Source: Fimbriosthenelais zetlandica (taxonomy: Eukaryota). From it: 64,000 bases of DNA. The DNA is taken from positions 3,720,001 to 3,784,000 of the forward strand of contig OZ365116.1 in the NCBI GenBank assembly GCA_977030845.1, in the 5' to 3' direction. A model generated the notes under the pieces. It searched no databases and had not been told where the DNA came from. It was given only the letters and a program-made list of their open reading frames with translations. Positions 18,456 through 48,484 of the stretch are shown here, one piece after another (within the stretch, counting starts at the first letter, position 1; every line of letters starts with the position of its first letter). The translations under genes and the position numbers were made by a program.

Positions 18456-19195
18456 GAATTCAATGTTATTTAAGACCAAATCAATGTTATTTAAGACCAA
18501 ATCAAACTTGTCAGAATTAAGGTCCAGTGAACTAGTTTATATATCTGTTTTATTTAAATTATTCGTACTTGGGTGAGTAGAGCCTACGTGAAGTGGACTG
18601 GGCAGACTATGTCCATCTGACATGGATATATCAAGAGCTGGCAGGGGTGGAGGAGGTGGAGGTGGCGGGTCCAGGCATTGCTGAGGGGGTGCACGATCCT
18701 CTTGAGACATATTTTCTGAAAAAATGTATGCAAACAAATAAGTACAAATACTGAGATAGTTTAGTGAAGTACCGGTACCTGTAGGCTATCAGATAACCAG
18801 TATAATTTAATGACATTATTCATTTCACGATTTCGCATAGTTGTCATTACCATCAGAGCTGAGCCTGATTTAATAGGTGACAGAAGCATATTGAATGAAG
18901 AAAGGATTCTCAAAGATTCCCTAAGATATCAATTTAAAGTCATGGGAATGACCAGGTAAACCGTAAAAACAAAAGCTCTGCCCCGCCCCCCTGGCAGCTC
19001 TGCTGGCTAAGGCAGGCCTGACGGAAGACCGCAGGACGGGACTCAAAAAGCCCTGCAATCGGTATTATTTTCGTCTAGATGGGGTTGTCAACAACAAAAC
19101 AAGGATTATTATACATCAATGGTCTGGTAGGCATCTATATCTATGAAATTTAAAGGAAAATAACTGTCTGATACACAAATAATGCGTTAAATTAC

Positions 19196-28500: not shown

Positions 28501-31500
28501 TGAATCCTCCAATACTGAGTTAGAGAAGAAGCTGAGAGAGAAGACTGACGAACTGGACAAGATTAAAAGCGAGCTTGAGGGGAAAGTGGTCAAAGTTGAG
28601 GAGCAGTTGAAAGAAAAGGAAAGCCAGTTTGCTTCTGTTCAAGAACAGTTACTTCAGTCTCTGAAACTGGTCCAAGAAAAGGAGTCTTCGTATCAAGACC
28701 AGCTGAAGACTGAGAAAGATCAGTACAATAAGATGATAGAAGACTATCATAAAAAAATACTGGGCCATGAAAAGGCTTCAGATGAACTCCAACGAGACGT
28801 AGCTGATCGTGAGTCCAAAATCAAATCTCTTAATGGAAATCTGGAGTATGTGAATAGTGAACTGGTTCAGAAAGATAAACTCCTTCATGACACCCGGGAA
28901 GAGATGGGTGGCTTGAAACAGCAGATGGACGTGCAGATATCCAAGATGGCTGAAAGTGAAAAACTCCAGGCTAAAGTGATTGAAGAACAGGGAATAAAGA
29001 TTACGTCCTTGATGGAGAATCTGGAAGAAATGAATGAACAATTAGGAAAAAATTCCACCCAAACGGAAGAGCTGGAGTCTGAACTGAGAAATGTTAATGA
29101 AGCTTTGACAGTGGCTCGGACTTCACTCGAAGAAATGGAGAAAACCCAGAAGACTTTGACTGAGGAGTTACAGCATTGTAAGCACGAGTTACAGACTTAC
29201 ATGCACCAAACAGCTGAGTTAACTTCCAAGTTAAACGAAGAAACAAAAACCAATTCAGAGCTCCAACAAAAACTCACTGATGCACTTTCTGCTTGTGGCC
29301 ATCTTGAAAATGAGCTCAAAATGAAATGTGAGGAGTGTGTGCAAATAAATGAGAAGGTTGTAGCTCTCTCCACAGACTTAGAAGGCCAACATCTTAGTTC
29401 TGAAGTAGCAACGCAAAAACTAACTGAGAAGGATAGTGTTTTGAAATCTATGAATGAGAATTTGCAGAGTGTAGTTGAGGAATCAGGTCAACTGAAGGAA
29501 AAGTTGAGAGAAAAGCAAGGGGAGCTAGAAAAGGTGGTGAAGGATGTAGACAATCTAAATCAAAGTCTGAAGAAAAAGGATGATGAATTGAAGGAAATTT
29601 CTGATAAATTGGATGAAACTTCTAAAGAAGTTGATGAATTACAAACTCAATTAGGAAATACAGATAGTAAGTCTAGCCAACAACAGGAACTTATTCAAAA
29701 ACTGAAGCAAAAGTTGAAACAAACAACTGTGACTTTGAAAAGTAAAGAAGAAGAAATAGAAACTCTAGAAGGGTCACAAAAGAATCTGACTGAACAAGCT
29801 GCTTCTCATGCTAAGAAAATCGAGGATCTTCAGCAAACCATTGAATCTAAGAATAGCCAACTTGTACTAGCTACAAAACAAGTAGAAGAACATTCCACTG
29901 ATGCGCTCAGCAAAGCAAGTCTAATCAAAGACCTTGAAGATAAACTGAGTCAATTAAATACTCAACAAGAGATTTCTCATCAAGAGTTACTGGACCTCCA
30001 ATCCTCTCATCAAACTAAGGACAGTGAATTAGAAAGGCTAAAGAAATCTCTTACTGAGAGTGGTGAAAATATTGCTGACCTCAACCAAAAGCTGGAACAA
30101 GCAGACACCTATGGTACACAGGTACGAGGAACGGCTGAACATTTAGAGAAGTTAATCCAAGATAATGACACCAGGTACAGGCAAGATGTCACAGTCCTGC
30201 AGACTAAAATACACGAATTGGAAGAGTCAGAAAAGATGTCCCTGGGTAAGCTAAAAGAGAAGAATCAACAAGTGTCTGACTTGACGAGTGACGTTGAGAC
30301 TAAAACAAGACAGCTCCAGTCACAACTAGAAGCCACACATCATAGTGGCGAGGAGCTCCAGCGAAGTCTGGCCCAGAAAGATGAACAGATCGGAATACTC
30401 ATGAAAACTGCTCAAGACTTCCAAAAGGAATCAGTTGAAAAGGAAAGGCAAGTTGAAGCACTGACTTTAGAGAAGGTTGGTTTGCTACAGAAAGAACAGG
30501 CTCAGAATGAAGCTGTGAGCAAGTTAGAAGATGCTCGGAGCAACCTACAGGAAGAGTGTAAACGGTTACAAGGTTATTTGTCAGGGGCCAAACAAGAACT
30601 GGAAGAGAAGAGCGGTCTGTTAGATGCCACAAAGTCCACATCTGAAGAACTAGCTCATCAACTGAGGGACCTCCATGACAAACGAGTCTCACTAGAGGAA
30701 CTTCTAAAACAAAGAGATGAAACATTGGAACAGCTAAATGCTAAAGTAGAGGAGAAGGATGGGGAGATCAAGAAAATGAAGGAATCATTCTCTGAGGCAA
30801 TGGCCAAGAAAAGTGAAGAGATGGAACAAAAAGCTCAGGAGCTTGGGCAAAGGTTGAAAAAGGTCGTTGAAAAGCAGCAAGCTCAGCAGGAATCAAAGGA
30901 TGCTGAGATTGAAGTTCTCACGAAGGCTGTTGGTGAAAAAGATGAGAAACTCTTTAAGATGACTGAACAGTTACAAGACCAGTCTGAACGCTTCCATGCT
31001 ACCATGGCAACCCTGGAAAACGTTCAGACAACAGGCCTGCAGGAAACTGAGAAAACCAAGTCCTTGGTTATGGAAAAAGAGATGGAGATTCAGAACTTAA
31101 AACAATCAGTCTCAGACACTCACTCGTCTTTGAAGGAGAAAACTAATGATCTTGAGAAGACGAGGGCTTTACTTAAAGATAGAGATGAACGGTTGTCCAC
31201 TATGTCACAGAGTCTCAGTCAGAGCCAAGAGGCTGCTCAAAACTTGAACTCTGAAAAGGAACAGTTAGAGAAAAGGTTTGTTGAAATCCAAGAGGTACAA
31301 GGCTTGCTGAAAAGCGAACTTGGAGAAAAGCAGAATCTCTGTCAACAACAAGAAAAGACTATAGAAGAAGAGAGGTCAGCTGTTAGCAAGCTTCAAACTC
31401 AGTGCCAGGAACTAGAGAAAAGCCTCGAGGAGGAATCAGAAGGAAAGGCTGATGAGATAGAACACCTACACTCAGAACTAAAATCGAAATCTAGGGAACT

Positions 31501-34500
31501 GCAGATGGTTGAGAAAAAATTATCCAGACTTGAAGATTCAGAAAGTAAGGAGAAAATGCGTGTTGAGGAGTTATCAGGCTTGATGTCAGAGAAAGATCAA
31601 CATATTTTGTCTCTTACTCATAAACTAGAAAATATGGACAAAGATCTGAAAGCTTCTATCACTGAGAAAGGCTCCAAGGAAAGTGAATACATGGACATTG
31701 TTCACAAGTATGAGACTGTTACACGTACCTTGGAAGAAAAGGATAAACAAATAGAAAATCTGAGTGAAACATTAGGACAACTGAATGAACAGATAACATC
31801 GTATTCAGTTCAGATTGAACAACTTCAAGCAAATGAGGACAATTATCTGAAACAAATAGAAGATATACAAGGAACTGTAACACAGAAATCTGAACAGATT
31901 GTGATGTTATCCTCTGAAATAGAATCTCATCTCTCAGAAATATCGAGAGTCCAAACTATGCTGACTGAAAAAGATGCCCATGTTTCACAACTTCAAAAAG
32001 TAGTTACTGATTTGCAATCCCAGAGTGACGAATCAAGTAAGATTGCCTCATGTCAAGCCATACTCCAGGACCAACTTACCTCACTCCAAACACAATATGA
32101 AAATGCAACAAAAGTTCTTCACGAAAGGGACCAAACCATAAGCGACCTCAACCTAACTATAGATGAAAAGCAGAAGAATCTACAGGACTATGAAAAAGAA
32201 CTAGACGAACTGAAAGAACAACTCCTTCAATCAAGAGAGACGATTGAAAGCAGTTCAGTACAAAGTGAGGCTGAGCTCTCAGTACTGAGAGAGAAAGTAC
32301 AAGAATCAAACACTCAAATAGAACAGTATGTCATCGAGATAGAATCATTGCAGCAGGATAAAGCCAACCAGAGATCTGAGAGTGACGTCCTGGGTAGAAC
32401 GATCCAAGAGAAGGACATGAAACTAGAATCTTTAAGTGAGAACCTTCAGGCTCTTGCTCTAAATCTAGAAGCCACCAACAATGATCTAGAGGCTTACCGT
32501 AATGCTCTGAGTGCTGCGGAAAACAAAACACAAGCCCAAAAAGAAGAGTTAGAAAAGGCATCCAAGACCGTGACAGAGTATGAGGAAAAGGTACAGGCGG
32601 CTACCAAAACAGTGGAGGAGAAAGAAACACAAACTAAAAAGTACCTGGTACTCATTAAAAAGTTAAAACAACAGATGACTGAGTTAAAGGAAAAAAGTAA
32701 AGCCTCAGCTGATCTAGAGACTTCATTTGGAGAGAAATCAAGTCACTTAGAAGAAAGTCTTAAACAAACACAGGAAGAAAAAGAGAAGCTACAAATCCAA
32801 CTTGATGAGTTATCAACAAGTAATTCAACTTTGAATAGTTCACTTCTGGAGAAAGAAAAGTCAAAAGAGGAAATGAATACTCAGATTCAACAGTATGCGG
32901 CTTATGGGGAAGACCTTCAGAACCAGCTCGACCTGGCGTCCCAAAAAATAGAATCATATGAGAAAGATGTTTCCCTGCACCAGTCCCAGCTTTATGAACT
33001 GAAGCAACAAGTGTCCACTTTCAGGGACAAGTGTGCGGCAGATGAAGCCAAAATCAAAGAACTAACATCCCAAGTGGAGAAAGCCCAAGACCTGCTTCAA
33101 GCCCAGTCTCAGAGTTATAAGAGGGAGCTTGAAAACCTGCAATTAGAATCAGAAAGCAAGGACTCTGCTCTGAAAGACACAGCGCTTCAGATTCAACAGG
33201 TTGTTCAAGAAAGGGAAGAGACCAGTCAAAGACTTCACATAAAGGAACAGGAGCTTGTCCTGTCACAACAAGAGGCGCACAGACTTAATACAGAAGTGAG
33301 ACAAAATGTTGACCATGTTCAACTCCTCCAATCAAGTGATTCTGAGAAGGAAACTGCTCTTTCCTCAGCCCTGAGTCACGTGAATCAACTCAAAATGAAT
33401 CTTGATAGAGAAAAATCCCGAGTCATTGAACTAGAAGAAGATAATGTGGCCTTCCAATCCAAAACTTCCGAGAAAGAGAATCTTCTTGCATCCCTCCAAG
33501 AAGTACAGTTACAAAACCAAGCTAAGATCTCTGAGAAGGACAATGTGATTCTATCTCTCCAACAAGAAATGATAGAGATTCAATCCAAGGCCTCTGAGAA
33601 GGAAAACATTGTGGTTTCGCTCCAGCAAGAACTCCTAGAAATCCAGAAAAGTATCTCAGACAAGGAAGCCTCAGAATTGCATTTGAAGGGTGAAGTGCAG
33701 GCACTTTTGCTCCGAGCTTCTGAAGCTGAAGCCACCGCCTCGATTCAAGTCCGTGAGGAGATGACAGCAATCAATGCCATGTTACAAGATAACATTGCTA
33801 CACTCGCTGCCAAGGAAACTGAGGCTTCCAGATGGCAACAAGAAGTGACCTCCCTTCAAGCTGCCTTAGAAGAACTCCAGACCACATTAAGTAGTATGGA
33901 ATCCAAACATGACGTTAAGGTGAAGGACTATGAGCAACAAATTGAAGATCTGAAGGCATCAGCTGCTCTCACTTCCGAGGAAAAACCTGATTTGTTAGCT
34001 AAAATAAAATCACTCCAGGAAGAAAATGTGTCTTTGCGAGAGGAGGTGGAGGCGAATTCTGATTGGGTCATGGAAGGGACTCAATATAGCAAGACAGCTG
34101 AGTTAGAAGAGAAATTATCAGGGCTTGAAAATGAGTCAACGCTTCTTCAAGACAAGTTACATTCCATCCAGGAGAGGAACAGTTTGTTAGAGGACGAGTT
34201 AAAGTCGAGTCATTCCAGATACGAAGCGTTGATGGAGGAGTATTCCATGATGAAGGAGAGTAAGGAATTTGAGGATCAGATGGATGACGATGCCGAGGCT
34301 CTGAGATGGCAGCTGGAGGCTGTGCAGGCAGAGAAGGACACACTACACGACCAAGTTACAAGTCTATCTGAAGAGAGAAACAAACTAAACACATCCTTAG
34401 CAGAAACGGAGGAATGTCTCCAGAAGGTACAGTCTGAAATAATGACAATGAGTAGTCGTTCAGATGACCAGGAAGTCGAACTGGACACCCTCGGTAACAA

Positions 34501-37500
34501 GGTCTCTGTCACTATAGAAGAGAAGGAATCTCTAACAGCCGAGTTAGAAAAGACCACAAATACCTTGATGACTTTAGAAGCTGCTTTCAACAAGCTTACT
34601 GCAGAGAAGGACAATTTACAGATCATGTTCCAAAAACTACAATCAGATTTCGAAATGGCTTCTGAAGAAAATAAGAAGTTGGTTCATTACAAGGAAGAAG
34701 TTACCCAGAAGTTTGAAGATGTGTCCCTGGAAAGGACAGAGATCGCAAGTCAGTTGGAAAGATTGATGACAGAAAAGGATAGAACATTGAGTGCGGCTTC
34801 GTCTCCCGTCAAAGAACACAAGTTTGAAATAAAACCAGTTGAAGCAGAACAATTACAGCGAGCTCCAGATGAGGCCTCCATGACCAGGGATCTCCAACAA
34901 AAACTAACAGAGGCTGAAACTGAGAAAGACGAGTTAACAAGCAAGATGGAGATCCTCGAAATCAAGAACGATAAGATGTTAACAAAGCTGAAACAGTTTA
35001 AAGACAGGAATGATAAACTTCAGGCTCAGGTAGAGACATTGACTGGACAGATACAGGCTTCCACATCCACCTTTGATGAGATGAGAACAGGTCTGGAGAA
35101 GGAAAAACTTCATCTTGAAGTTGCCCTTCAAGAGGCGCGAGGTCAGGTGGCGGCTCGTGGAGGTCATCTACAGAAACTCATGTCAGATTTAGAGGGTGAG
35201 AAAGCACGATATGCCACACTGGAGGCTGAGTTCCAAGGCACAACAGAGGAAATGCAACTCCAGGTAGACAAACTAATGCTTGAACTGGAGCACCTCAAAG
35301 ATGAGAATCAGTTAGCCAGGAATGAGGCGGAGACTACAGCCCGAGAGCAGGTCCACAAACTGAGGGAGCAGCTCGACAAAACGTCAAGTAACGAGGAGCA
35401 CTTGACGACCGAGATGAGGAAGTTACGTTCACAATACGATAACGATGTCAAGTCTCTGAAAGAGGAAAAACAGAGCCTCAATGAAAAACTATCAGAGATG
35501 GAAACATCAGAGAGGTTAAAGAGGGAGGCATTAGAACGGAAAAACACAGAGCTAGAGGAGCAGTACAAACAGCTGGAATCAGACATAGAACATTATCAAG
35601 ACTTAATGTGTAAACTTAAACAGCAGATGAAGGTGCAGGAAGACAAGGTGAAGAAGGTGGAGGGAGAGCTACAGGCTGTGGAGGAAGAGAAGGACGCCCT
35701 GGAGGAGCAGGTAGAGAGTATAGAGGAGTTACAGGATAAAGTGGTCGACACATCAGCGCTTAATGAAAGCCTGCAACATGAGATCTCTGAACTCAAGACA
35801 AACCTAGAGACAACCTCAAAGAAGAAGGTGGCTCTACAGGAGGAGATAGATGGACTGAGCTGGAAGGTGGAGGAGTACACTGAGCTAGACGAGGACCTCG
35901 CACAAACACGCGAGCGACTCTACCAGATACAGAGCGAAAACGGCGGCTACAAGCGCAAACTCCGTGAAGCGGACGCCAAACTACAGGAGCTTTCTACAGT
36001 GAAGGAAGATTATCAAACCTTGACTGATGAGTATAATAAACTACTACAAGACAATGGACTGAATGTGAAACAGGTGGAGGATATGTACAACCAGATCAGG
36101 ACGCTGAGAGATGTACAGAGTCTGTATGAAATCATGAAAGAAGAACAAGAATCGATGGATACTCAATCAAAATCAATGTCTGTACAAGCTCAACAACTCC
36201 AGCGAAATCTAGCGGAGGCCATTCAAGAGAAGGAATGGTGCAAGACTGAAATACACACAATGAAAGCGGAAAAAGAGAAAATGCTGAGTGACATGAAGAA
36301 GATGAAAGGAGAGAAGGAGAGGTTGGAAATAGAGAATAGAAGTCTGGAGGCTGAGCTGGAGCAAGAGGGGGAGAGAGTAGCTGCCGTGGACAAGGTGAGG
36401 ATGGAGAGAGTACAGATGAGTCATGCTGCCCCAACACCGAGTCAATCACAGAGTCATCTAGAGGGACAGCTGAACGAGGCTATACAAACCATCCATCAGA
36501 AGGAGATGAGACTGGAGGAACTGGCCATGCAGGTAACTCCATACTCTATGTGTCCCTATGTCTCAAGTTCTTTGTGGGAAATATTATTGTGAATTTAAAA
36601 TAATTGAATTTAAAATCACATACTAATGTTGAGTTTTTTGTTCATGGTTTTTCCTTTTATTTCTTCCCACTTATATAACATTGCTTTTCATGAAACCTAG
36701 GGCTAGGGTATATTATTTTTATGGATCTTTCTTCTTTTGAGTACTTACCTTGAAAATGATCATTACTTCTTTACCCTAATCAGGTGAGCCAAATAAGTGA
36801 GGAGAAAACACATCTCAGTTCCCAGCTCAGCTCTGCAAGCCGCAGCATGGCCGAGCGAAGTCGGCGAGTGAAGAAGATGGAAGAGAAACTGAGAGAGTAT
36901 GAGGATAGTGAACGCGGAGATGCTGGCCACAGGGCCGCCACAGAGGCCCGGAGAGCCCTCTCTCAACAAACAGTGGAAGTAGAGGTGCTACAGAGAGAAC
37001 GAGAACAGCTGTGTTCAGAACGAGATACAGCTCTGTCACGGGCTGAACATTGTCACCAACAGGCGGAGACGCTGAGGTCAAAGGTCAAACAGCTGGAGGA
37101 ACGAGTAGGTGTACAAGAGAGGGAGATAACCGAGCAACGGCAGGCTGCAACACAGCAACAACGACAGCAACGTCCACAGGTAAGCCAACTCTTTACCTAA
37201 TCTTAATATCGCCATGTGGGTGGCCAAATGTGACTAAGAAAAAAAAATATAACAAGTATAAATCTACTTATAATTGACATTATAAACTTCTTACAAATTT
37301 TATTATAGTATTTCCTCCTCGATCATTTTTTCTCAAGAAAAACATGATTTTTAGTGAAAAGACAGTGACATGTTGAGTTTATATACATCAGGGCTTGGTT
37401 TATGTTGCAGGCTGTCGAGTCGAGGGCCAGTCGACCAGTCTCCATATCGCCCGAGGTCGACCCGGCGCTTGAGTTACAGAACCTCGGCAAACGGTACAGA

Positions 37501-40297
37501 TTTGAATATTCGCCTGTGCATCTTCCCCACAGGTGTGCTATAGGAGTAAAACTTGAGTCCTCTCTTAGGCTATTTGCTATCGGCTATAATCCAGGATTAT
37601 CCTGGTGTCAAATCTTTACCTCGTCCAGTAGCATTCCTGCTGTGAAAGGCTTCAGCTGATACAGTAGCTTTAGCTCTAACGGTTATACAAAAAACACCAA
37701 ATGCCAGTCATTTACTTTTTATAGGGATACCTGCTTACTTACCTTTATTCCTATCCCTTTTTAAAGGAAACATGTTTGTATTTTTGAGATATTTTTTTTG
37801 TAATTACCTATGTTGTGAATGTCACGAAGTTGTCGTATGAAAGTCTCGCACTAATGAACTGATTATATTTCTCATGTCCAGTCCTGACTTAGACCAGCTC
37901 GCAGCGGGCCTACCCAAGTGAGTTCCCTAACTCAGCTTACTCAATAGATGTGGGTGTTGTTGCCTTGTAGATCAGCGGCCCAACTCATGATACCTATAGT
38001 GTTGTGTCATGATACCTATAGTGTTGTGTCATGATACCTATAGTGTTGTGTCATGATACCTATAGTGTTGTGTTATGATACCTATAGTGTTGTGTTATGA
38101 TAACTATAGTCTTGTGTCATGATAGTGTTGTAGATAGATCCCAAGCGGAGGCCCAGGGATTGTGATAGTGCTCCCTGATCCACTTTCACTTCTCGTGATT
38201 ATAATGTTTAAAACCTTAGATAGCTATATGACGGACTCCTATGGCAGGGGCTAGGACTGATAAGTTGTATGGTGTTGTGACCCTCTAAGTTAGAATTGCT
38301 TTTACAGGCTTGAAAAATGTCATTTAATATCACATTAAGTCCCTTGTGTTCCACTTAGCTCTATTAATGTTTATTACAACCTTCCATATAAATATATATA
38401 GTTGGGAGTTTCTTGTGGTTTATCTATTAACATTGACTCAATTTTGAATTTCAAATTTCAATAATTCTAATTTTCCGGGTTCTTGGGAATATTTTTGTTT
38501 GTTCTTTTACAGTCATATTTATGTGGGGCCCAGTGCCTTTTTCTTGTTAATATTTCAGTTATTCTTTTCAAAATTTGCCTGTCTCTCTCTCTGACCGTCT
38601 CGAGGCTGAATCTCTTTCTGTGAATGATTAAATTTTGCTTGATGACAGTTTGGCGGAGTCTGAGATGAATCTGGAATCAGCAGCTGACGACAAGTCGAGG
38701 TTAGAGCAGACGTTAGTGGCAGAACGTGAGCAGAGACTAGCACTGGAGGAGGTGCTGGCCCAGGTACAGGAACAGCTGCGATACCAGGACCAACAAACCA
38801 TCCCACAGGTACAATTATTCTAAACCATCCCACAGGTACAATTATTCTAATCCATCCCACAGGTACAATTATTCTAAACCATCCCACAGGTACAATTATT
38901 CTAATCCATCCCACAGGTACAATTATTCTAATCCATCCCACAGGTACAATTATTCTAAACCATCCCACAGGTACAATTATTCTAATCCATCCCACAGGTA
39001 CAATTATTCTAAACCATCCCACAGGTACAATTATTCTAAACCATCCCACAGGTACAATTATTCTAATCCATCCCACAGGTACAATTATTCTAATCCATCC
39101 CACAGGTACAATTATTCTAATCCATCCCACAGGTACAATTATTCTAATCCATCCCACAGGTACAATTATTCTAATCCATCCCACAGGTACAATTATTCTA
39201 ATCCATCCCACAGGTACAATTATTCTAATCCATCCCACAGGTACAATTATTCTAATCCCTCCCACAGGTACAATTATTCTAATCCATCCCACAGGTACAA
39301 TTATTCTAAACCATCCCACAGGTACAATTATTCTAATCCATCCCACAGGTACAATTATTCTAAACCATCCCACAGGTACAATTATTCTAATCCATCCCAC
39401 AGGTACAATTATTCTAATCCATCCCACAGGTACAATTATACCTTTATACTCCAGTTTATTACCGGTATAATCACCTCAAGCGCTTCACTTGTATGTAATC
39501 AATCCGTAATCCATGTATAGGCACCTTCCCATTGTCCTATGGTTTGACTTAAGGTCATATAGTTATTTTGTATTTATTTAGCTTTAAACTTTCTTTCAGT
39601 ATTCCCTCCATATCGATGACTTGGCAGAGGTGGACGAGGAAGGTGCTAGACTTATCCCGGCGAGAACACTTAGTAAGTGCTTCATGTATTATGTTCTTAA
39701 TTATAAACATGTATTGTCTTTATTTTATAATTTGCAGGGTATATACAAGTCTTCTATACATTCTAGAATAACTGTTTAATTGCTTTCACCCTGCTAAGAT
39801 GTCACCAGACTGTGACAAAATTTTAACTTAAAAAACCCAGAGATGTATGAGAATATTTCTCATTGCAGCGCGTCAATGGCGGAGTCACTACTGGCGACTG
39901 CGGAACTGGTGGCTGCGACGCAGGTATGGCGAATATTTTAGGTATATCTAAATATGACATATATGAACGATAAATATATATTATATGTGTTAAATAGTAG
40001 TAGTTTATTATGATAAATATTATTCCATATTAATTTTTAAATATTCCGATCATTTAATATAATTATGATATGACTTATAAATTCATTTGTGATTTAAGTA
40101 GGAATGACGGATGTTGAATAAATATTTTTAAAGATTTCTATTTTGAATACATATTATTTTGAATGTTTTCCATTATTTGCAGCGCCTGGTTGAGTCGAGG
40201 TGTGCTCTCTGGACCCAATCTTCGCGGTACCATCATTATCTATCTCATTCTCCTCCACTTCTATCTTCTATTCGGCTGTTACCTCGGACTCCTATGA
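20837..40297 (+). CDS. GOLGB1: Giantin (golgin subfamily B member 1) orthologue, about 3,970-aa coiled-coil tail-anchored Golgi tether, 22 coding exons
   Basis: Exons: 20837-20920, 21119-21268, 21641-21751, 21913-22077, 22209-22334, 22754-22915, 23161-23274, 23994-24185, 24449-24634, 24805-25083, 25242-25359, 26404-26555, 26698-26883, 27415-27684, 27824-36532, 36784-37179, 37411-37493, 37882-37917, 38649-38808, 39600-39672, 39869-39923, 40183-40297. All are GT-AG with consistent phases (11,922 nt). The N-terminus MWGRLTGLASTV and SQLKDMVRQRD...KMKLQAKSKLASLNK parallel human giantin MLSRLSGLANVV and VELKDIIRQKD...KLKLHAKAKLTSLNK. The C-terminal TM segment IIIYLILLHFYLLFGCYLGLL-stop parallels AIYFLMIHVLLILCFTGHL. 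Confidence 0.92.
22502..22578 (+). repeat. (TTTA)n microsatellite, about 19 units, in a GOLGB1 intron
   Basis: Perfect tetranucleotide run read directly. Confidence 0.95.
25390..25718 (+). repeat. 37-bp pyrimidine-rich minisatellite, about 8-9 copies, followed by a CT-rich tract to about 25870
   Basis: Unit cttctacccctgactctccctccatcccttccttatc repeated in tandem, starting about 30 bp after the donor at 25360. Confidence 0.92.
25911..26398 (+). repeat. 45-bp minisatellite, about 11 copies, abutting the acceptor of exon 26404
   Basis: Unit attgatgtcaagctttgctcactggttggttttatatggtatttt. It explains the repetitive 15-aa ORFs in the track. Confidence 0.95.
26975..27390 (+). repeat. 23-bp AT-rich minisatellite, about 17-18 copies in two sub-variants
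   Basis: Units aaaatagacagtattaaaccggt grading into aaaatagacagtattgaacttat. Confidence 0.9.
37986..38125 (+). repeat. 22-bp minisatellite, about 6 copies
   Basis: Unit catgatacctatagtgttgtgt in a GOLGB1 intron. Confidence 0.9.
38797..39439 (+). repeat. 27-bp minisatellite, about 24 copies, each containing the exon end and 5' splice site
   Basis: Unit aaccatcccacag/gtacaattattcta. The first copy overlaps the end of coding exon 38649-38808. Confidence 0.97.
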
Positions 40298-43250
40298 TGA
40301 AAAATAACCGAGGACTTCATGACGCACTCTCACCTCGGCTCACAGAGGTCATCATATCTTTATACTACGATCTGAAGTATAAGAACTTTTCATACATCTT
40401 ACTAGGTTGAGAAGGACCAGATTGTTTTGGACAAAGCTCCAAAAGTTTTGTTTTGCTAAATCTTTAAAGGCCAAGGACGAAGTTTGGATGGTTTGAGATA
40501 TTATTAATGTGAGAGATATTATAATTTTAAACTTGTCAAATTATGTTTGAAAGTAGCCTTGAAGCCGGCTAATTTTCAGTTTAGTTAATAATGCATTTTA
40601 TTTGACAATGTTTTGTAAACCGTGACAATTTCGATGGACATGTATAACATCGCCTCTGTCCTAGCTAAACGTGTGGGACGGTTTAATTTTATGCTTCTAT
40701 TTTCTTTGCTTTGTATAAGGAAAAGTCCAGGTATGGAATCTCACTTGATAATGGTATGTAGTTTGTACTAAGTCAAAACAACTCCAGAAGTTTTAACTTG
40801 TTAATGATTATTTCTGAGTCGGAGTTAAGGGATGATTCTCTCTTCCCACCACTCATCTCTCATTGATTGTGAGGTTTGAGTCCATTGGATGGTAGTCATT
40901 CAGTAGAGCTAGTTATTCTTACTTCCATAGGCTTTCCATTCATTAATTAGGATTATCGTTAATCCCAAGGTGAGAGGTGATGTGAGCCACTGTTGTTGAT
41001 TATTAACCATCTGTGATAATCTTATCTATAGGTATTAACTGTCAACTGATCGGGATTATCTCCTAGTACCAGTACACATGGTGCCATTCTGGTTAATCCC
41101 TCATTCCATTACGAGTTGTGGAAACCAACACATTAATTATTATTAATCAACTATAATGTCCTTCACTTCATTATAGGTTTGATATTTTAGAATGATAATA
41201 GGGATTCTCCATTTCATTATTTGCTTTCTTTGCATTAATTTCGTATTTGTAATTACATATTTTAATTCGTTATTATCTCTCTTACCCATTTCCATTGCTT
41301 CTGTGTTTTAGCCATTTAAATAATACAGCTTGTAGAGATCCATAATTTACTTGGTTATATATGAACATTTATAATTTAAATCGGTAAATGGAGCAATTGC
41401 TTCAACATATCAGACTTCATCAGAAACAATTTTAAACTGGATTTGAACATGAAAATGTGTACAGAATATAAATGTATGGCTATTTCCTAGAATCAGTAAA
41501 TGACAAAAATATTTATATGAGAATTTTATGTATGGTTGTATGCACTAGCATTTCACGCGACCCATGCTTGTCTGAAACTGCATTCACTCAATGTCGTGTA
41601 ATTATATGAACATCTAAAAATCACGCTATTTTCTTGAATAACCTCTGGATATACAAACAAGAGAATGTAATAATGGGTAATTTACCTGAAGATAAACTTC
41701 CAGTCGCCTGTATAATAATAATTTGTCACTTTCTTGTGTCTCGGGGAGTTGTTCCCTTCTATGATTATTGCCAATGTTCACTGTTTTAAATGGAAATAAT
41801 ACTGTGATAAATGTTTGGAAGTTGAGAAAGAATCATGCCGCGAATTTCTATTAGTTACATAGAAAGATTATTGATTAAAACTTCCCCAGAATTGACCTAC
41901 CATGTTGATGGCTAGCAATATATGGATTATATTGAGGTATAGTCGTCGCTTCATAATTAATATTAGGTTATTAATCTATTATGAAATGGGCAAGTCAGAT
42001 ATTTTTAATCAAATGTTTGGAACTAGATGGCATTTCATAAGGATCACAAACTGCATGGAATGTGAACTGAATATTGTGTAAAGTTCTGTAAATGTATTTA
42101 TTTCCACGCATATTAATTTTTTATGCACAGAAGGTCATTAATCTATTATGTGGGTTTTAGAATATATGGATTCTAAAAAGTAATCATTTTTGGTTCGTAT
42201 ATGAAATGTAATGTAACATTGAAATGTATTTGGGTATATTGCTTTATTCTTGTATTTGGAGAATAATTCGTTATTAAACGGATAGCGGTAGTACAATCAA
42301 GGTTGATTAACGTGGGTTCTAATTCATTATTGGGGGATCATATATTAATTATTGTACATACAAAACGTGCTCATTAATATCTGATGTATAATAGTGTTCT
42401 ATCTGAACTCACCCACTCTTTGCTATGGTAGGTTTTAAGGCTTGTATTTGAAGTTCAATACTTCTGAGAGAATGTCGCATTTTAACATGTACATTTTGTT
42501 CTACAATAGGATATATGAAGTTGAATATAGCGCTTATTTCATTACATGTGATAACACTCTATATATTATATTATTCAAACCACTGATTAAGTTAAATTAA
42601 AGAGAATTAATCTAACCCTATTATCTGTAACCATAGATTTTAAAGAATGTGAGTTTATGCTCTCCCGCGCCACTGCCCATGCAGTCATTCGCATACCCTC
42701 CGAAAGAATGAATTAACACAAAATTTGTTTAAGAATATGTTGGAAAAACTTATGAAAGTGATTGTAATATAGAAGGTGTAAGGGTGCTGTGACATTATCA
42801 ACTACTGCAAGCTGTATACATACTGTATTACACATGGGCCATACTGGTATCATGTGGCTATGTTATGAACGGAGGTGATGGAATAAATACTCTATAAAGA
42901 GTGTATATACAAGTACTTTATCTTATCAAGTTATGTTCACATTGCAACCTTCTGATCAATGTCCCTCTAACGGTAACAACTGTAGCGTCCTATGGAAATG
43001 CCTAGAAAGTCAAAACTTTTGGGGGGGAAATGCTACGGTCGTTCCCAACTAAATAATTATGTTGTTACCCATGACTACAGAATTAACGACCTTTACAAAA
43101 TTATATTTTAATTATAATTTTTTTTATAAATGGTTTACTTTGCGATTGTGGGATGGTCGCGAGAGATCACCTATTTAAATCCTTGGGTCTGGCCCTGATA
43201 TGTCATCTATTCTTCCCATGTGTTGTGATTTGTATGGTTTCCCAAAAGAA

Positions 43251-43321
43251 TTGCCAGGCAGGGAATCGAACCCGGGTCTCTGGCGTTCCAGGCCAGTGTC
43301 TTACCCCTGGCCTACCTAGGG
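43251..43321 (-). tRNA. tRNA-like element/pseudo-tRNA (Gly-type scaffold, GGA at the anticodon position), copy 1
   Basis: CCCTAGG TA GGCC AGGGGTA AGAC A CTGGC CTGGAAC GCCAG AGAC CCGGG TTCGATT CCCTG CCTGGCA A. It is 71 nt with an A-box-like TAGGCCAGGGG, a perfect B box GGTTCGATTCC and a downstream TTTT. Acceptor and D stems are imperfect. Confidence 0.7.
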
Positions 43322-44899
43322 CGACCTGATATATGCTACGGCCAAAAGGTGACCTAGCTTACTATTATGGTATCGTGCTTCATTGCGCATGTGCTCAGGC
43401 CAGGCGCGGGGACACTTCCGCCACTCACGACTAGAATCAAGCTAAACATGAAATAGAGGAGGGTGTCATTTTCCGTCGGACAAGGACGTGAACAATCCGT
43501 GTCACGACTCTGATTTCGAAAATCTTTAATATCTCGGCAACCACTCGGTCTTTTTTAGAAATTCAAAATGGAAAATCTTAGTTGGGAAAATGTCTAATGG
43601 GTGGTATAGGAAATAAATACTGAAACTGCTTCTAAAAATTTCGATTTTCAAAATATAGCCAATTTCACAAGGTGTCCCGACTCCAGCCCTGTTTCCAATC
43701 CAAGGCTCCGATCTCAGCTGAAAGTCCGGCACAGTGGCGCCCTCAGGTGGTGGATGAACGAAGGCCTATATGACGATTGGCGCAAAGGCCTATAGCATTG
43801 GACTCTATGGAAGGAGCAAGCCAGCGCGACTGCAGCGCCCCGAGATATGATGTGGGAGAACGCTGAACTATGCTACTATAGCATTGAACTCTATGGAAGG
43901 AGCAAGCCAGCGCGACTGTACAGACATGATCTAGCGGGGGACTAGATGAACTATGTTCCTGGCCTCTTTGTCTCCTCTTCCTCTGTCCTCTTCCTTCTCC
44001 GCTCTCTCCCTTCTCTGCATCCAATGCCACAACCCTTCAGTGCCCCTCAATCTGGTTCTGCGAACCTCCCACCCGTGGCCTCTTGAAGCCCTCTGACCAC
44101 TGAAGCGTTGAAAAAGTTGAAGCTATTTCTGGCATATTTTCTCTCCAAGTTTACCTCCTCCCATGATCCTTTGCGGCTCGATTTTTAAGAAGTTGAATAT
44201 CTCCGCAATTAAGGGGTCTAAAATTATAATTGAAACGGATTATTCTTAGTTGGGAGCACCTCCAGGCGGCTATGTGGTTTTTATTTCAATAAAATTCATT
44301 TAAAATTTCTGATTTTCAAAATTGACTGAATTTCTTCAATTAGCATTGGAGTGAATGGAAGGAGGAGCCTGAGCGCCAGTGGCGACCCGAGATGCCCTAG
44401 CGGCGAAATCGTGAACTACTATGCCCGAGCCCCTGTCCCGGCTGGAAGGCCTATGCTGGCTTGTGCATAGTAGTTCAAGTTTTCGCCGTTAGGGAGTCTC
44501 GGGTCGCCACTGGCGTTCGGGCGCCTCCTTCCATTGACTTCAATGCTAACTGATGAAATTCAGTCCATTTTGAAAATCCGAAATTTTAAATTGATTTTAT
44601 TGGAATAAAAACCACATAGCAGCCTAGAGGTTCTCCTAACTAAGAATAATCCGTTTAGTTTGTATTTTTAGACCCCTTAATTGCGGAGATATTTAAGATT
44701 TTCGAAATCAGAGTCGTGACACGGATTGTTCACGTCCTTGTCAGACGGAAAATGACACCCTCCTCTATTTCATGTTTAGCTTGATTCCAGTCGTGAGTGG
44801 CGGAAGTGTCCCCGCGCCTGGCCTTAGCACCTGCGCAATGAAGCACAATACCATAATAGTAAGCTAGGTCACCTCTTGGCCGTAGCATATATCAGATCG

Positions 44900-44970
44900 C
44901 CCCAGGTAGGCCAGGGGTAAGACACTGGCCTGGAACGCCTGGGACCGGGGTTCGATTCCCTGCCTGGCAA
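44900..44970 (+). tRNA. tRNA-like element/pseudo-tRNA (GGA), copy 2
   Basis: CCCCAGG TA GGCC AGGGGTA AGAC A CTGGC CTGGAAC GCCTG GGAC CGGGG TTCGATT CCCTG CCTGGCA A, with TTTT at 44976-44979. Confidence 0.7.
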
Positions 44971-45104
44971 ATCGCTTTTGATTGCCACCTGGAGCGCTAC
45001 GCATGTATGCGGCTTATAGTGTTGACATGGGTTTGGTTTTTTTTTCGTTTGAGTTGCCGATGGGAGGAGTATCGTGCAATGACCTGACGATAGCAGACAG
45101 TGTG

Positions 45105-45175
45105 TGCACGGTAGTCTAGAGGTAAGACACTAGCATGGATCGCGAGAGACCGGGGTTCGATTCTGTGTCCATTAA
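45105..45175 (+). tRNA. Diverged tRNA-like element (GGA) in the spacer of the large inverted repeat, copy 3
   Basis: TGCACGG TA GTCT AGAGGTA AGAC A CTAGC ATGGATC GCGAG AGAC CGGGG TTCGATT CTGTG. The D stem GTCT/AGAC is perfect, the acceptor stem is decayed, and a T6 run lies at 45179-45184. Confidence 0.55.
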
Positions 45176-45246
45176 ACGTTTTTTCGCTGCTCACCACAGT
45201 GGAAGTGCTATAGAGTTAACATTGGCCTATGGTTTCCCAAAAAGAA

Positions 45247-45317
45247 TTGCCAGGCAGGGAATCGAACCCGGGTCTCTGGCGTTCCAGGCCAGTGTCTTAC
45301 CCCTGGCCTACCTGGGT
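45247..45317 (-). tRNA. tRNA-like element/pseudo-tRNA (GGA), copy 4
   Basis: Nearly identical to copy 1 (5' ACCCAGG...), with a TTTTT terminator just downstream on the minus strand (45239-45243). Confidence 0.7.
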
Positions 45318-46199
45318 CGACCTGATATATGCTACGGCCAAGAGGTGACCTAGCTTACTATTATGGTATTGTGCTTCATTGCGCAGGTGCTCAGGCCAGG
45401 CGCCCGGGCACTTCCGCCACTCACGACTGGAATCAAGCTAAACATGAAATAGAGGAGGGTGTCATTTTCTGTCGGACAAGGACGTGAACAATCTGTGTCA
45501 CGACTCTGATTTAGAAAATCTTAAATATCTCCGCAATTAAGGGGTCTACAAATACAAACTAAACGGATTATTCTTAGTTGGGAGCACCTCTATGCGGCTA
45601 TGTGGTTTTTATTCCAAGAAAATTCGTTTAAAATTTCTGATTTTCAAAATTGACCGAATTTCATCAGTTAGCATTGAAGTCAATGGGAGGAGGCGCCCGA
45701 ACGCCTGTGGCGACCCGAGACTCCCTAGCGGCGAAAACTTGAACTACTATGCACAAGCCAGCATAGGCTGTATGAAGCATGGCCTTCCAGCCGGGACAGG
45801 GGCTCGGGCATAGTAGTTCACGATTTCGCCGCTAGGGCATGTCGGGTCGCCACTGGCGCTCAGGCTCCTCCTTCCATTCACTCCAATGCTAATTGAAGGA
45901 ATTCAGTCAATTTTGAAAATCAGAAATTTTAAATGAATTTTATTGAAATAAAAACCACATAGCCGCCTGGAGGTGCTCCCAACTAAGAATAATCCGTTTC
46001 AATTATAATTTTAGGCCCCTTAATTGCTGAAATATTCAACTTCTAAGAATTCGAGCCGCAAAGGATCATGGGAGGAGGTAAAGTTGGAGAGAAAATATAC
46101 CAGAAATAGCTTCAACTTTTTCAACGCTTGAGTGGTCAGCGAGGATCGAGGCGCACTGAAGGGGCAGCGGCGACAAGGCGAACTACTACGACTGCCCTG

Positions 46200-46435
46200 T
46201 TGATAGATAGAGAGAGAGGGAGGTAGAGAGGGGGAGAGATATAGAGAGAGGGGGTGAGAGAGGGAGAGAGAGATAGAGAGAGAGGGGGTGAGAGAGGGAG
46301 AGAGATAGAGAGAGGGAGGGGGAGGGAGGGGGGAGGGGGGAAGACAGATTCTAGGTCTGGCTTAGGAATAGATATATACAGTATAGAGAGAGGAGAGGGA
46401 GGGGGAGGGAGGGGGTGGGAGGGGGAGGGGGTGTG
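46200..46435 (+). repeat. Purine-rich GA/GGA low-complexity tract immediately upstream of the PLA2 start
   Basis: Runs of (GA)n, GGGAG and GGGGAG. Confidence 0.85.
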
Positions 46436-46488
46436 AGCCCAGATAATATAACTCAGTCCATGCATCATCCAGACTGACGAAGATCATC

Positions 46489-48484
46489 ATGATGAAACAT
46501 CCATTCTCCTTCCTACTTCTCTTCCTCCTGGTCATCACACCATTGTCTAGTTCGTCCCCAGTCCGTCAGAAGCGCTACCTGATGTGGGCAGGTACCAAGT
46601 GGTGTGGTCTTGGAGACACCGCCTCTCATGACGAGGATTTTGGAACAGAATTGGAGGCTGATAAATGTTGCCAAGCTCATGATTACTGCCCGGATAAAAT
46701 CAAGAGATGGAAGGAGAAATACCACTACAAGAACTGGCGCTTCCATACCATCAGCCACTGTGCCTGCGACGAGGTGTAAGATATTTTAATATCATTATTC
46801 AATAATTCATGGAGTGAGCCAAATACTCCCATATAGGCCTACCTGTGCTACTTTCCCTCCGGAATTTACCTGACAAGTATAAATATTGTCATGCATGTAT
46901 AACGAGGGCAAACAACTACTTTTTGAAGGGTGCAAGAAATGTCTCTAATACACCAACGGCATATTAAAATCAAATCTAGTACACATACATGTATATAATT
47001 ATATCAATGTTAATTTTTGTAGACCAGGCCCGGGTTACAATGTTTTCTTTGGGTGTATCAGTCAACAGATGGTCCCCAAAGTAGGCGAACTGGTTTCTTT
47101 AAACATCCTCCATTTCTCTATTACAACCTGCCATGAGAACAGCTTGAATGGAGCTAACATCCTAATAACATATACAATGTATCTCAACCTAGACTCCACA
47201 CATGTACAAGAGTCATGTTTAAAAAGAAAACAAATGTTAAAAAAATAAATTTCATAGGTCTGCCTTGTGTTGGGATTGTATAGGTGTATATTTAGGTTGG
47301 GATTGTATAGGTGTATATTTAGGTTGGGATTGTATAGGTGTATATTTAGGTTGGGATTGTATAGGTGTATATTTAGGTTGGGATTGTATAGGTGTATATT
47401 TAGGTTGGGATTGTATAGGTGTATATTTAGGTTGGGATTGTATAGGTGTATATTTAGGTTGGGATTGTATAGGTGTATATTTAGGTTGGGATTGTATAGG
47501 TGTATATTTAGGTTGGGATTGTATAGGTGTATATTTAGGTTGGGATTGGAGAATTTATACATGACAGACTATGAGGCTATCGTGCCGGTGGTTGATAACC
47601 AAACCTTTCTATAGTTCTATACCACAAAGAGAACAATAGATCTATTATGAATCTATAGTGGAATGACCTATCTCTGCCTGTCTCTGTCTCGCTCTGTCTG
47701 ATCAGTTACTCTCAAAGTGGGAGAGACAAATGAGACATGAATGGAGCTAATACACGAGTGGGGTGCCAAGTTTATGTCAGCTATCACAACTTCAATGTGA
47801 TCCAGCGTCAATATGGTCTCCTGGAATGACGCCAGGTTTTATAGGTGCTGAGGGCACTGAGTGAATGGAGCAGCTCTTAATACGCTCCCTGGATTGTATG
47901 AGTGGGTGTAGGGGGTTCATTATAGGGCCGAGGATATGGTAGTTATAGAGGCCCATCCCTCTCAGATGGACTTTTGGAAAAGAGGGGTCGGAGACAAACC
48001 TAGGATGTGGTCCCCCAAAATAATACATAGGCCTATTGAGGGACAAAATGTCATCACCAAAAGGGTTTGGTCCCAGCCTCGTGCATGGACCTACCCCTGC
48101 ATGAACTCGCCCTGCTTATCAGTGACCTCCATTTCCCCCCAAATCCTCTGCCCCTGTTATTCAACTTATTGGTTCTAAAAATGATCCAATTTTTGTTTCA
48201 GATTTAAGCTTTGTCTACAGAGCGCTAACACGACGACGGCAGACAGCATCGGTGAATGGTTCTTTAATAATCTGCGTATTGACTGTTTTACCGTCTCCTA
48301 CGAGCTAACGTGTATAGCCCGCCACTGGTACGGCTCCTGCCGTGTCTACGGTATGGACTATGTAGCTCACACAAGAGATTCTGTACCTTACGTTCCAGCT
48401 AGTCATGATCCATACATCAATAATAATACCATCTATTACCCCTACCCTCCCCGTATACGTGACTCTATTAAATATACATATTAG
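46489..48484 (+). CDS. Secreted phospholipase A2, group III (bee-venom-type fold), 189 aa, two coding exons
   Basis: Exon 46489-46775 (donor gt/gtaaga) joins exon 48202-48484 in phase 2. Features: hydrophobic signal peptide, RQKR dibasic processing site, Ca-loop GTKWCGLGD, catalytic CCQAHDYC, HCACDEVFKLCL, IGEWFFN...CF. AATAAA near 48569. Confidence 0.93.
47270..47548 (+). repeat. 27-bp minisatellite, about 10 copies, in the PLA2 intron
   Basis: Unit tgggattgtataggtgtatatttaggt. It accounts for three repetitive ORFs in the track. Confidence 0.95.

What the first reader, a model, noticed from the sequence alone, without database searches (positions are those of the whole stretch)
43233..46165. 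Palindrome of palindromes: nested foldback element that carries Pol III tRNA-like units at its ends
An inverted repeat with arms of about 0.9 kb (44094-44975 and 45240-46139) and a spacer of about 260 bp. Each arm is itself a 229-bp stem with a 40- or 55-nt loop. By eye the two big arms differ by scattered substitutions, whereas the two halves of each inner stem are clearly more diverged, so the inner foldback appears older than the outer inversion. A third unit (43233 onward) is inverted relative to the left arm, giving alternative pairings. Each unit ends in a tRNA-like gene read away from the body of the repeat. In copies 1 and 4 the shared sequence stops about 18 nt past the tRNA, just beyond its T-run terminator. 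This is the opposite polarity to a SINE (head then body), so it looks like a DNA foldback module that captured and propagates a tRNA-like cassette. The CT-rich tract at about 43965-44015 may be the mirror of the GA tract at 46200-46330, which would extend the arms. It could form cruciform or multi-hairpin DNA and long dsRNA, directly upstream of a gene. I do not recognise the family; novelty is inferred.
Basis: partly seen in the sequence, partly recalled or inferred. Interest (0 to 1): 0.8.

Follow-up and report, generated by a model that had tools for sequence, protein, structure and literature searches.

The report
Nested foldback repeat carrying tRNA-like mini-genes
Just upstream of a phospholipase A2 gene in an animal genome sit two and a half copies of a non-coding ~0.9-kb repeat, each a long hairpin ending in a decayed tRNA-like mini-gene. 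It is most likely a foldback-type repeat rather than a SINE, and is unusual mainly for the mini-genes at the arm ends.

Summary
Two ~0.93-kb arms (44033-44979 and 45239-46165) are inverted copies at 94.8% identity around a 260-nt spacer. Each arm holds an older inner hairpin with 252-nt arms at about 86% identity, and 25 of its 34 mismatches are shared by both arms.

Each arm ends in a 71-nt tRNA-like unit. It scores 37 bits on Rfam tRNA, has a GGA anticodon, an exact B box and a T4-5 run 3-5 nt downstream. It reads away from the body, so the SINE layout fails.

The units are relics:
- The acceptor and D stems are broken.
- The minimum-energy fold is not a cloverleaf.

A third partial copy (43233-43551) matches only the tRNA-plus-linker block at 93-94%. 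A weaker fourth tRNA-like unit (18.7 bits) lies in the spacer.

My best reading (0.55) is a local cluster of a non-autonomous foldback-type repeat built by successive inverted duplications, with the Pol III mini-gene carried as part of each arm. I could not define termini, target duplications, copy number or expression, because no reads or outside copies were reachable.

The scan had already noted similar ~1-kb foldback arms with tRNA-like units on other pieces of this genome (for example s1-231872, which has a follow-up). I could not check those notes. Interest is moderate.

The parts
43233..43551 (-). Unit 0, conserved block. It comprises 18 nt of 3' flank including T4 (43244-43247 on +), the tRNA-like unit 43251-43321, a ~190-nt linker, and the first ~40 nt of the hairpin arm.
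   Evidence: (D3, I3). It is 93-95% identical to R (direct) and L (inverted), and the three copies are star-like equidistant.
43552..43960 (-). Unit 0, diverged remainder. It is a collinear ~65-70% relative of the tRNA-proximal hairpin arm, with a ~120-nt insertion and an 86-nt tandem duplication (43790-43832 / 43876-43918). There is no distal arm and no tail.
   Evidence: D6, D8; z 8-12.
43960..44018 (.). CT-rich tract just outside the left arm. It may be the counterpart of the GA tract at 46205-46437.
   Evidence: sequence. One search found no alignable similarity beyond it.
44033..44179 (+). Left arm (L), outer end and tail. It includes a 37-nt indel relative to R.
   Evidence: I2; tail 91.8%; extension, z=7.1.
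44180..44709 (+). L inner hairpin: arms 44180-44431 and 44458-44709, loop 26 nt.
   Evidence: I4; 86.5%, no indels; minimum free energy -384.5, z=-37, for 44168-44721.
44710..44899 (+). L linker between the hairpin and the tRNA-like unit. It contains ATATAT at about -15.
   Evidence: (95.8% to R).
44900..44979 (+). L tRNA-like Pol III mini-gene (44900-44970, anticodon GGA) plus T4 at 44976-44979.
   Evidence: (37.1 bits).
44980..45238 (.). Spacer. It contains a T9 run (45037-45045), a decayed second-type tRNA-like unit (45105-45175, + strand) with T6 (45178-45183), and the 11 nt (45228-45238) shared by R and unit 0.
   Evidence: D7, I6, I7; 18.7 bits.
45239..45317 (-). R tRNA-like mini-gene (45247-45317) plus T5 (45239-45243 on +).
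   Evidence: (37.0 bits).
45318..45507 (-). R linker.
45508..46052 (-). R inner hairpin: arms 45508-45759 and 45801-46052, loop 41 nt (it has a 15-nt insertion relative to L).
   Evidence: (I5).
46053..46165 (-). R tail and the outer end of the inverted repeat.
   Evidence: (I2).
46205..46437 (.). GA-rich tract with 32-34-nt sub-repeats, interrupted at about 46343-46385. It lies between the right arm and the ATG of the phospholipase A2 gene (46489).
   Evidence: (D1, D2).

Best explanation
This is a local cluster of two and a half copies of a non-coding, non-autonomous foldback-type repeat.

The basic module is about 0.93 kb. Read in the sense of its tRNA-like unit, it runs: outer tail, a 530-nt internal hairpin, a 190-nt linker, a 71-nt tRNA-derived Pol III mini-gene, and a T-run.

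The architecture grew by two successive inverted duplications:
1. An older one made the inner hairpin. Its arms are now about 13.5% diverged, and most differences are shared by both outer arms.
2. A younger one copied the whole module, mini-gene included, into the L/R palindrome. Those arms are now 5.2% diverged.

The partial unit 0 either belongs to a diverged subfamily that shares only the terminal block, or had its tRNA-plus-linker block overwritten by gene conversion from L or R.

The mini-gene keeps a usable A box and an exact B box with its own terminator. It could therefore still be transcribed into an RNA of about 85 nt, but it is not a working tRNA. It travels as a passenger of the arm rather than driving retroposition.

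Shown here: the anatomy, the relative ages, the polarity, the decay of the tRNA-like units and the hairpin stability. Inferred: that this is a dispersed, DNA-mobilised family, and that Pol III is active on the mini-genes.
For: The shared mismatches show that the inner hairpin predates the outer duplication.

Identity between L and R is uniform across tail, arms, linker and tRNA-like unit (92-97%). All parts were therefore copied together and have drifted neutrally since.

The tRNA-like units match Rfam tRNA at 37 bits. They have two acceptor and two D-stem mismatches, and their minimum-energy fold is not a cloverleaf (z about 0). The B box GGTTCGATTCC is exact and the T4-5 run follows within 3-5 nt.

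There is no coding capacity. ORFs are at most 110 aa, and the three ORF probes found no relatives.

The arms differ by 47 substitutions plus an indel and have different flanks. A read-chimera artefact would give perfect arms.

Leads only, not checked: nine or more first-reader notes and one follow-up from other pieces of the same genome describe 1.9-2.5-kb foldbacks, or clusters of ~1-kb arms, each with a tRNA-like Pol III unit at the arm end.
Against: No second locus could be examined, so dispersal is unproven here.

No target-site duplication or clean terminus was found. The outer ends run into CT/GA microsatellite, and the hairpin ends show no duplication (reading).

The three copies of the 300-nt block are star-like equidistant. 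That fits a single local rearrangement or gene conversion as well as it fits family membership.

The GA tract next to R may belong to the promoter of the phospholipase A2 gene. If so, host sequence was duplicated, which favours a local event.

The G+T skew on one strand of the ancestral hairpin hints at transcription, which a purely DNA-level parasite does not need.
Confidence: 0.55

Rival explanations
1. This is a purely local segmental event with no mobile family. A tRNA pseudogene with its upstream region, which already held a palindromic insertion, was duplicated in inverted orientation by fork stalling or template switching near the Pol III unit. A gene-conversion patch later overwrote part of unit 0.
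For: All copies in the window lie within 3 kb. The three 300-nt blocks are star-like equidistant. Orientation alternates (-, +, -). The high-identity patch in unit 0 is bounded on one side by the end of homology. CT and GA tracts sit just outside both arms, and one of them adjoins a gene start.
Against: Unchecked notes describe the same architecture, ~1-kb arms with tRNA-like ends, at many other loci of this genome. The units are richer in GC and CpG than the flanks, as foreign or repeat DNA would be.
Confidence: 0.2
2. Each arm is, or descends from, a transcription unit for a long hairpin RNA that serves as a small-RNA precursor. Its 3' end would be defined by cleavage at the downstream tRNA-like element, in the manner of MALAT1 and mascRNA.
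For: The order is hairpin then tRNA-like unit, on the same strand. At the 25 ancestral arm-to-arm mismatches the tRNA-sense strand carries 10 G:U against 2 A:C (p=0.04) and 38 G+T against 12 A+C (p=3e-4). The sense-strand RNA is 43 kcal/mol (L) and 19 kcal/mol (R) more stable than the antisense strand. The arms have no indels in 252 nt.
Against: The skew also appears at non-wobble mismatches (18 against 8), so a strand-biased mutation process explains it as well. Changes since the L/R split show no bias. About 20 mismatches break pairing on both strands. The tRNA-like units fold poorly. No RNA data could be obtained.
Confidence: 0.1
3. The body is an element that inserts at a fixed distance upstream of Pol III genes, as Ty3 and Dictyostelium TRE5 do. 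The tRNA-like units would then be pre-existing targets rather than part of the element.
For: The body always lies 5' of the tRNA-like unit. A tRNA-like unit without the body exists in the spacer, so these units occur independently.
Against: The tRNA-like unit and 8-19 nt of its 3' flank are as similar between copies as the body is. They were therefore copied together, at least locally. There is no coding partner and no target duplication.
Confidence: 0.08
4. The inversion is an assembly artefact.
For: Palindromes are prone to mis-assembly, and no reads could be laid on the locus.
Against: The arms differ at 47 positions plus a 15-nt and a 37-nt indel. The spacer is unique.
Confidence: 0.03

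Closest known systems
Foldback-type DNA transposons with very long inverted arms: Drosophila FB, Galileo (PMC3573991), Tetris (PMC4079207) and Tm1 of root-knot nematodes (PMC3169594)
   Same: Most of the element is made of two long inverted arms around a short middle. It is non-coding. Simple or tandem repeats lie at the arm ends (the GA-rich 32-34-nt sub-repeats at 46205-46341). It tends to form compound clusters.
   Different: Here the arms are built around a second-order palindrome rather than tandem sub-repeats, and each carries a tRNA-derived Pol III unit. No target duplication, conserved terminal motif or transposase partner could be identified.
tRNA-derived SINEs
   Same: A tRNA-related sequence with A and B boxes is linked to a non-coding repeat body.
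   Different: The body lies 5' of the tRNA-like unit. A T4-5 terminator follows the unit at once, and many T-runs in the body would stop Pol III. There is no A-rich or LINE-like tail. The layout fails the SINE definition.
MER6 DNA transposon carrying the SINE V domain (PMC6887750)
   Same: It is a precedent for a SINE-derived segment being multiplied as a passenger of a DNA transposon.
   Different: In MER6 the passenger is a conserved SINE body domain, not a promoter-bearing tRNA-like head with its own terminator.
Hairpin-RNA (endo-siRNA) loci and the MALAT1/mascRNA type of 3'-end processing at a tRNA-like element (from my own knowledge)
   Same: A long, near-perfect inverted repeat could give double-stranded RNA. 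A tRNA-like element lies 3' of a longer RNA on the same strand.
   Different: No expression data exist here. The tRNA-like units are poorly folding relics, and the arrangement is repeated and inverted like a transposon.

Membership tests
tRNA-derived SINE | A 5' tRNA-related head with internal A and B boxes | tested here: met
   Rfam tRNA scores 37 bits. The B box GGTTCGATTCC is exact. The A box TAGGCCAGGGG matches 7 of the 9 specified positions of TRGCNNAGTGG (reading; the consensus is from established knowledge).
tRNA-derived SINE | The body lies 3' of the head and is co-transcribed by Pol III | tested here: not met
   The shared body lies 5' of the tRNA-like unit in all three copies. T4-5 follows 3-5 nt after the unit, and similarity ends 8-19 nt past it.
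tRNA-derived SINE | A 3' A-rich, simple-repeat or LINE-derived tail, with flanking target duplications | tested here: not met
   Neither was found at the unit ends.
Foldback-type (long-TIR) non-autonomous DNA transposon | Two long inverted arms make up most of the element | tested here: met
   The arms are about 930 nt at 94.8% identity with a 260-nt spacer.
Foldback-type (long-TIR) non-autonomous DNA transposon | Target-site duplication at the two outer ends | tested here: inconclusive
   The ends of the repeat lie 14-35 nt from CT/GA microsatellite, and no duplicated flank is recognisable.
Foldback-type (long-TIR) non-autonomous DNA transposon | Multiple dispersed copies, and a transposase-coding partner | not testable with these tools
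   Only the window is readable. No runs were listed. The ORF and DNA probes found nothing. Notes from other windows are unchecked leads.
Palindromic MITE (inner hairpin taken alone) | Small size, terminal inverted repeats, target duplication, and independent copies | tested here: inconclusive
   Size (530 nt) and inverted arms are met. No duplication flanks 44180/44709. The only copies lie inside L and R, plus a diverged half in unit 0.
Functional tRNA gene | An intact cloverleaf and an isotype-consistent body | tested here: not met
   The score of 37 bits is only just above the threshold of 29. Acceptor pairs 1-2 and two D-stem pairs are broken. The minimum-energy fold is not a cloverleaf, with z between -0.7 and +0.3. 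A GGA (Ser) anticodon sits on a 71-nt body that lacks the long variable arm (the isotype rule is from established knowledge).
Hairpin-RNA / small-RNA locus | Transcription of the inverted repeat and small RNAs mapping to it | not testable with these tools
   No sequencing run was listed. Only indirect strand-skew hints exist.

The most novel reading that the evidence does not exclude
The ~0.9-kb arm may be a dispersed transcription unit of a new kind: a long hairpin RNA whose 3' end is cut out by the tRNA-processing machinery at an attached tRNA-like tag. The hairpin could be a small-RNA precursor, or the RNA form of the element itself. The family would be kept under RNA-level constraint in its source copies. 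The foldback arrays would then be by-products of a repeat that uses a 3' tRNA-like tag.
Probability: 0.1. Interest if true: 0.8.

Novelty: new variant of a known kind. Interest (0 to 1): 0.45.

Why it matters
If the family is truly dispersed, it would be a foldback-type repeat that multiplies promoter-and-terminator-bearing Pol III mini-genes by a DNA route rather than by retroposition. That would seed many TFIIIC/Pol III binding sites and long hairpin-forming DNA next to genes, here 50-330 nt from the start of a secreted phospholipase A2 gene. Such sites can act as boundaries, replication-fork barriers, double-stranded RNA sources and rearrangement hot spots. It would also explain part of the many odd tRNA-like 'genes' that tRNA finders call in this genome. 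As it stands, this is a well-described but functionally untested repeat.

Tried and rejected
Searches that led nowhere:
- Reads: the look-up of sequencing runs listed nothing, either with the 2-kb palindrome or with the neighbouring exon. Read laying could therefore not be used, and assembly support, copy number by depth and RNA or small-RNA evidence are all untested.
- Outside copies by ORF probes: the 52-aa linker ORF and the 72-aa tRNA-antisense ORF found nothing. The 73-aa hairpin ORF, run against 1.8 billion representatives, gave only chance hits to bacterial repeat proteins.
- Outside copies by DNA pattern in metagenome contigs: none.
- Rfam: only the tRNA model matches. A sub-threshold plant miRNA hit (MIR5635, 49.8 bits against a threshold of 149) merely reflects a long hairpin.
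- Organism: not identified. The closest relative of the window's ankyrin-SOCS gene is 78% identical, on a Logan contig of run ERR14368245. The atlas searches point vaguely to invertebrates. A paper search for the accessions was empty.
- Literature: searches for foldback elements with tRNA-like units found no description.

Ideas I rejected:
- The tail and the linker are not inverted copies of each other (z=0.3).
- A decayed second-type tRNA-like unit to the left of unit 0 is not supported (z=2.5; no Rfam hit).
- The repeat does not extend beyond the CT and GA tracts.
- The TATGGGG termini reported for another foldback of this genome do not occur at this locus.
- Readings of the hairpin ends as piggyBac-like (TTAA) or Tc1-like (CAGTGC) fail, because the inverted repeat continues past those motifs (reading).

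Full report
**What is there.** The region 43.2-46.4 kb holds the only large inverted repeats of the 64-kb window. The repeat finder gives arms 44082-44978 and 45239-46150 around a 260-nt spacer (I1+I2). A gapped alignment of the two arms, which I call L and R, has 850 matches, 47 mismatches and one 15-nt indel, which is 94.8% identity. The repeat continues significantly to 44033-44052 / 46145-46164 across a 37-nt indel (z=7.1, 0 of 500 shuffles).

Fourteen to 35 nt further out lie a CT-rich tract on the left (43960-44018) and a GA-rich tract on the right (46205-46437, with 32-34-nt sub-repeats). Nothing beyond them aligns.

**The inner level.** Each arm contains a hairpin:
- In L it spans 44180-44431 / 44458-44709 with a 26-nt loop.
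- In R it spans 45508-45759 / 45801-46052 with a 41-nt loop.

The arms of each hairpin are about 86% complementary. In L there are 34 substitutions and no indel. As RNA, 44168-44721 folds into one 250-bp stem with a minimum free energy of -384.5 kcal/mol and z=-37.

**The tRNA-like ends.** ARAGORN and Rfam call three 71-nt tRNA-like units at 43251-43321(-), 44900-44970(+) and 45247-45317(-). All have anticodon GGA and score 36.7-37.1 bits against a threshold of 29. Each lies at the end of its unit, reads away from the body, and is followed by T4 or T5 within 3-5 nt. The B box is exact and the A box is close.

They are not good tRNAs:
- Acceptor pairs 1-2 and two D-stem pairs are broken.
- None of them gives a cloverleaf as its minimum-energy fold, and their energies are no better than shuffles (z between -0.7 and +0.3).
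- A GGA anticodon on a short-arm body fits no normal eukaryotic serine tRNA (established knowledge).

A fourth, more decayed unit with a T6 terminator sits in the spacer at 45105-45175(+). It is 83-85% identical to the others over 54 nt and scores 18.7 bits. Nothing upstream of it resembles the linker. Such mini-genes therefore also occur without the body.

**Polarity.** The shared sequence lies 5' of the tRNA-like unit in all copies. It ends 8 nt (L) or 18-19 nt (unit 0 and R) past the unit. Both strands of the body are full of T4+ runs, so Pol III starting anywhere upstream could not reach the tRNA-like unit. The SINE layout of head first, then a co-transcribed body, is tested and not met.

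**The third unit.** Unit 0 starts at 43233 with the same 11 nt (TATGGTTTCCC) that precede R. It is 93-95% identical to L and R for about 300 nt, covering the tRNA-like unit, the linker and the first 40 nt of the hairpin arm. In that block the three copies are star-like: there are 5-12 unique changes in unit 0, 7 in R and 9 in L.

Beyond 43551 the sequence remains collinear with the tRNA-proximal arm but at only about 65-70% identity. It has a ~120-nt insertion and an 86-nt tandem duplication, and the distal arm and tail are missing. This mosaic has two possible explanations. One is gene conversion of the block from a neighbouring copy. The other is that unit 0 belongs to a diverged subfamily that shares only the terminal block, which is the usual pattern for the cis-required ends of DNA transposons. 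I cannot decide between them from one locus.

**What it most likely is.** Identity between L and R is uniform across all parts: tail 91.8%, arms 96.8% and 93.7%, linker 95.8%, tRNA-like unit 94.4%. The mini-gene was therefore copied together with the body and has drifted neutrally since. Nothing in the region codes for protein.

I conclude that this is a cluster of a non-autonomous foldback-type repeat built by successive inverted duplications. A decayed tRNA-derived Pol III mini-gene is carried as part of each ~0.93-kb arm.

An assembly artefact is unlikely, because the arms differ at 47 sites and two indels, and the spacer is unique. It could not be excluded with reads, since none were listed.

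**Is it a family?** Within my reach this is untestable. No sequencing run, ORF probe or DNA pattern retrieved another copy.

The scan's own notes are leads only. They list at least nine first-reader findings on other pieces of the same genome. These describe 1.9-2.5-kb foldbacks, or arrays, whose ~1-kb arms carry inward- or outward-facing tRNA-like Pol III cassettes. One follow-up describes 'four inverted, non-coding 1-kb repeat arms, each carrying a decayed tRNA-like mini-gene'. The sizes match this locus. L+R is 2.07-2.13 kb with inward-facing units, and unit 0 plus L is 1.75 kb with outward-facing units. If the arms are homologous, the family is dispersed and tends to sit in alternating-orientation clusters. 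That raises my confidence in the family reading to about 0.55, against about 0.2 for a purely local duplication.

**Hints of something more.** At the 25 ancestral arm-to-arm mismatches, the strand that is sense for the tRNA-like unit shows two skews:
- It carries 10 G:U against 2 A:C (p=0.04).
- It carries 38 G+T against 12 A+C (p=3e-4).

The sense-strand RNA hairpin is also 43 kcal/mol (L) and 19 kcal/mol (R) more stable than the antisense strand. This would fit RNA-level selection on a hairpin transcript that ends at the tRNA-like element.

However, the skew is also visible at non-wobble mismatches (18 against 8, p=0.08) and is absent from changes since the L/R split. A transcription-type mutational asymmetry in the ancestral copy explains it equally well. 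Either way, it suggests that the source copy was transcribed in the tRNA-sense direction. I give the functional hairpin-plus-tag reading about 0.1.

The units also stand out in composition. Their GC is 45-48% and their CpG observed/expected ratio is 0.83-0.86, against 33-39% GC and a ratio of 0.56-0.66 around them.

**Comparison with known kinds.** The element works like a foldback-type element (FB, Galileo, Tetris, Tm1; PMC3573991, PMC4079207, PMC3169594). Membership in any superfamily cannot be claimed, because no target duplication, terminal motif or transposase partner was found.

It is not a SINE. The multiplication of a SINE-derived piece by a DNA transposon does have a precedent in MER6 and the V domain (PMC6887750). 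My literature searches found no description of foldback arms that carry complete tRNA-like promoter-plus-terminator units. Dfam and Repbase could not be queried.

I rate it a new variant of a known kind, of moderate interest.

Noticed in passing
window 46489-46776 (+): This is the first exon of a secreted group III-type phospholipase A2. It has a signal peptide, the WCGxG calcium loop and the CCxxHDxC active site (Pfam PF05826, E=5e-21). It starts about 50 nt after the GA-rich tract, so the foldback lies in or next to its promoter.
   Followed up: partly
window 38798-39439 and 47269-47548: There are two very regular 27-nt minisatellites: 23.8 copies at 97% identity and 10.4 copies at 100%. They create long spurious ORFs on both strands.
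   Followed up: no
window 27911-36592 (+), continuing at 36784-37200: A single uninterrupted 2893-aa ORF encodes a giant coiled-coil protein that looks golgin- or centrosome-like by composition. It ends about 6 kb upstream of the repeat cluster.
   Followed up: no
window 17280-18500 (-): A single-exon ankyrin-repeat plus SOCS-box gene lies here. Its nearest relative in the protein collection is only 78% identical (Logan contig of run ERR14368245), and the next is 51% identical. This genome and its close relatives are therefore poorly represented in public data.
   Followed up: partly
window 43238-46150 against the flanks: The repeat units have GC of 45-48% and a CpG observed/expected ratio of 0.83-0.86. 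The window as a whole has 39% GC and a ratio of 0.56. The repeat seems to have escaped the CpG depletion of its surroundings.
   Followed up: no
window 44180-44709: The inner hairpin arms differ by 34 substitutions but not a single indel over 252 nt. That is fewer indels than I would expect for neutral decay at 13.5% divergence.
   Followed up: partly
window 45037-45045: A T9 run lies 67 nt downstream of L's tRNA-like unit, in the spacer. It would stop any Pol III read-through past the weak T4.
   Followed up: no
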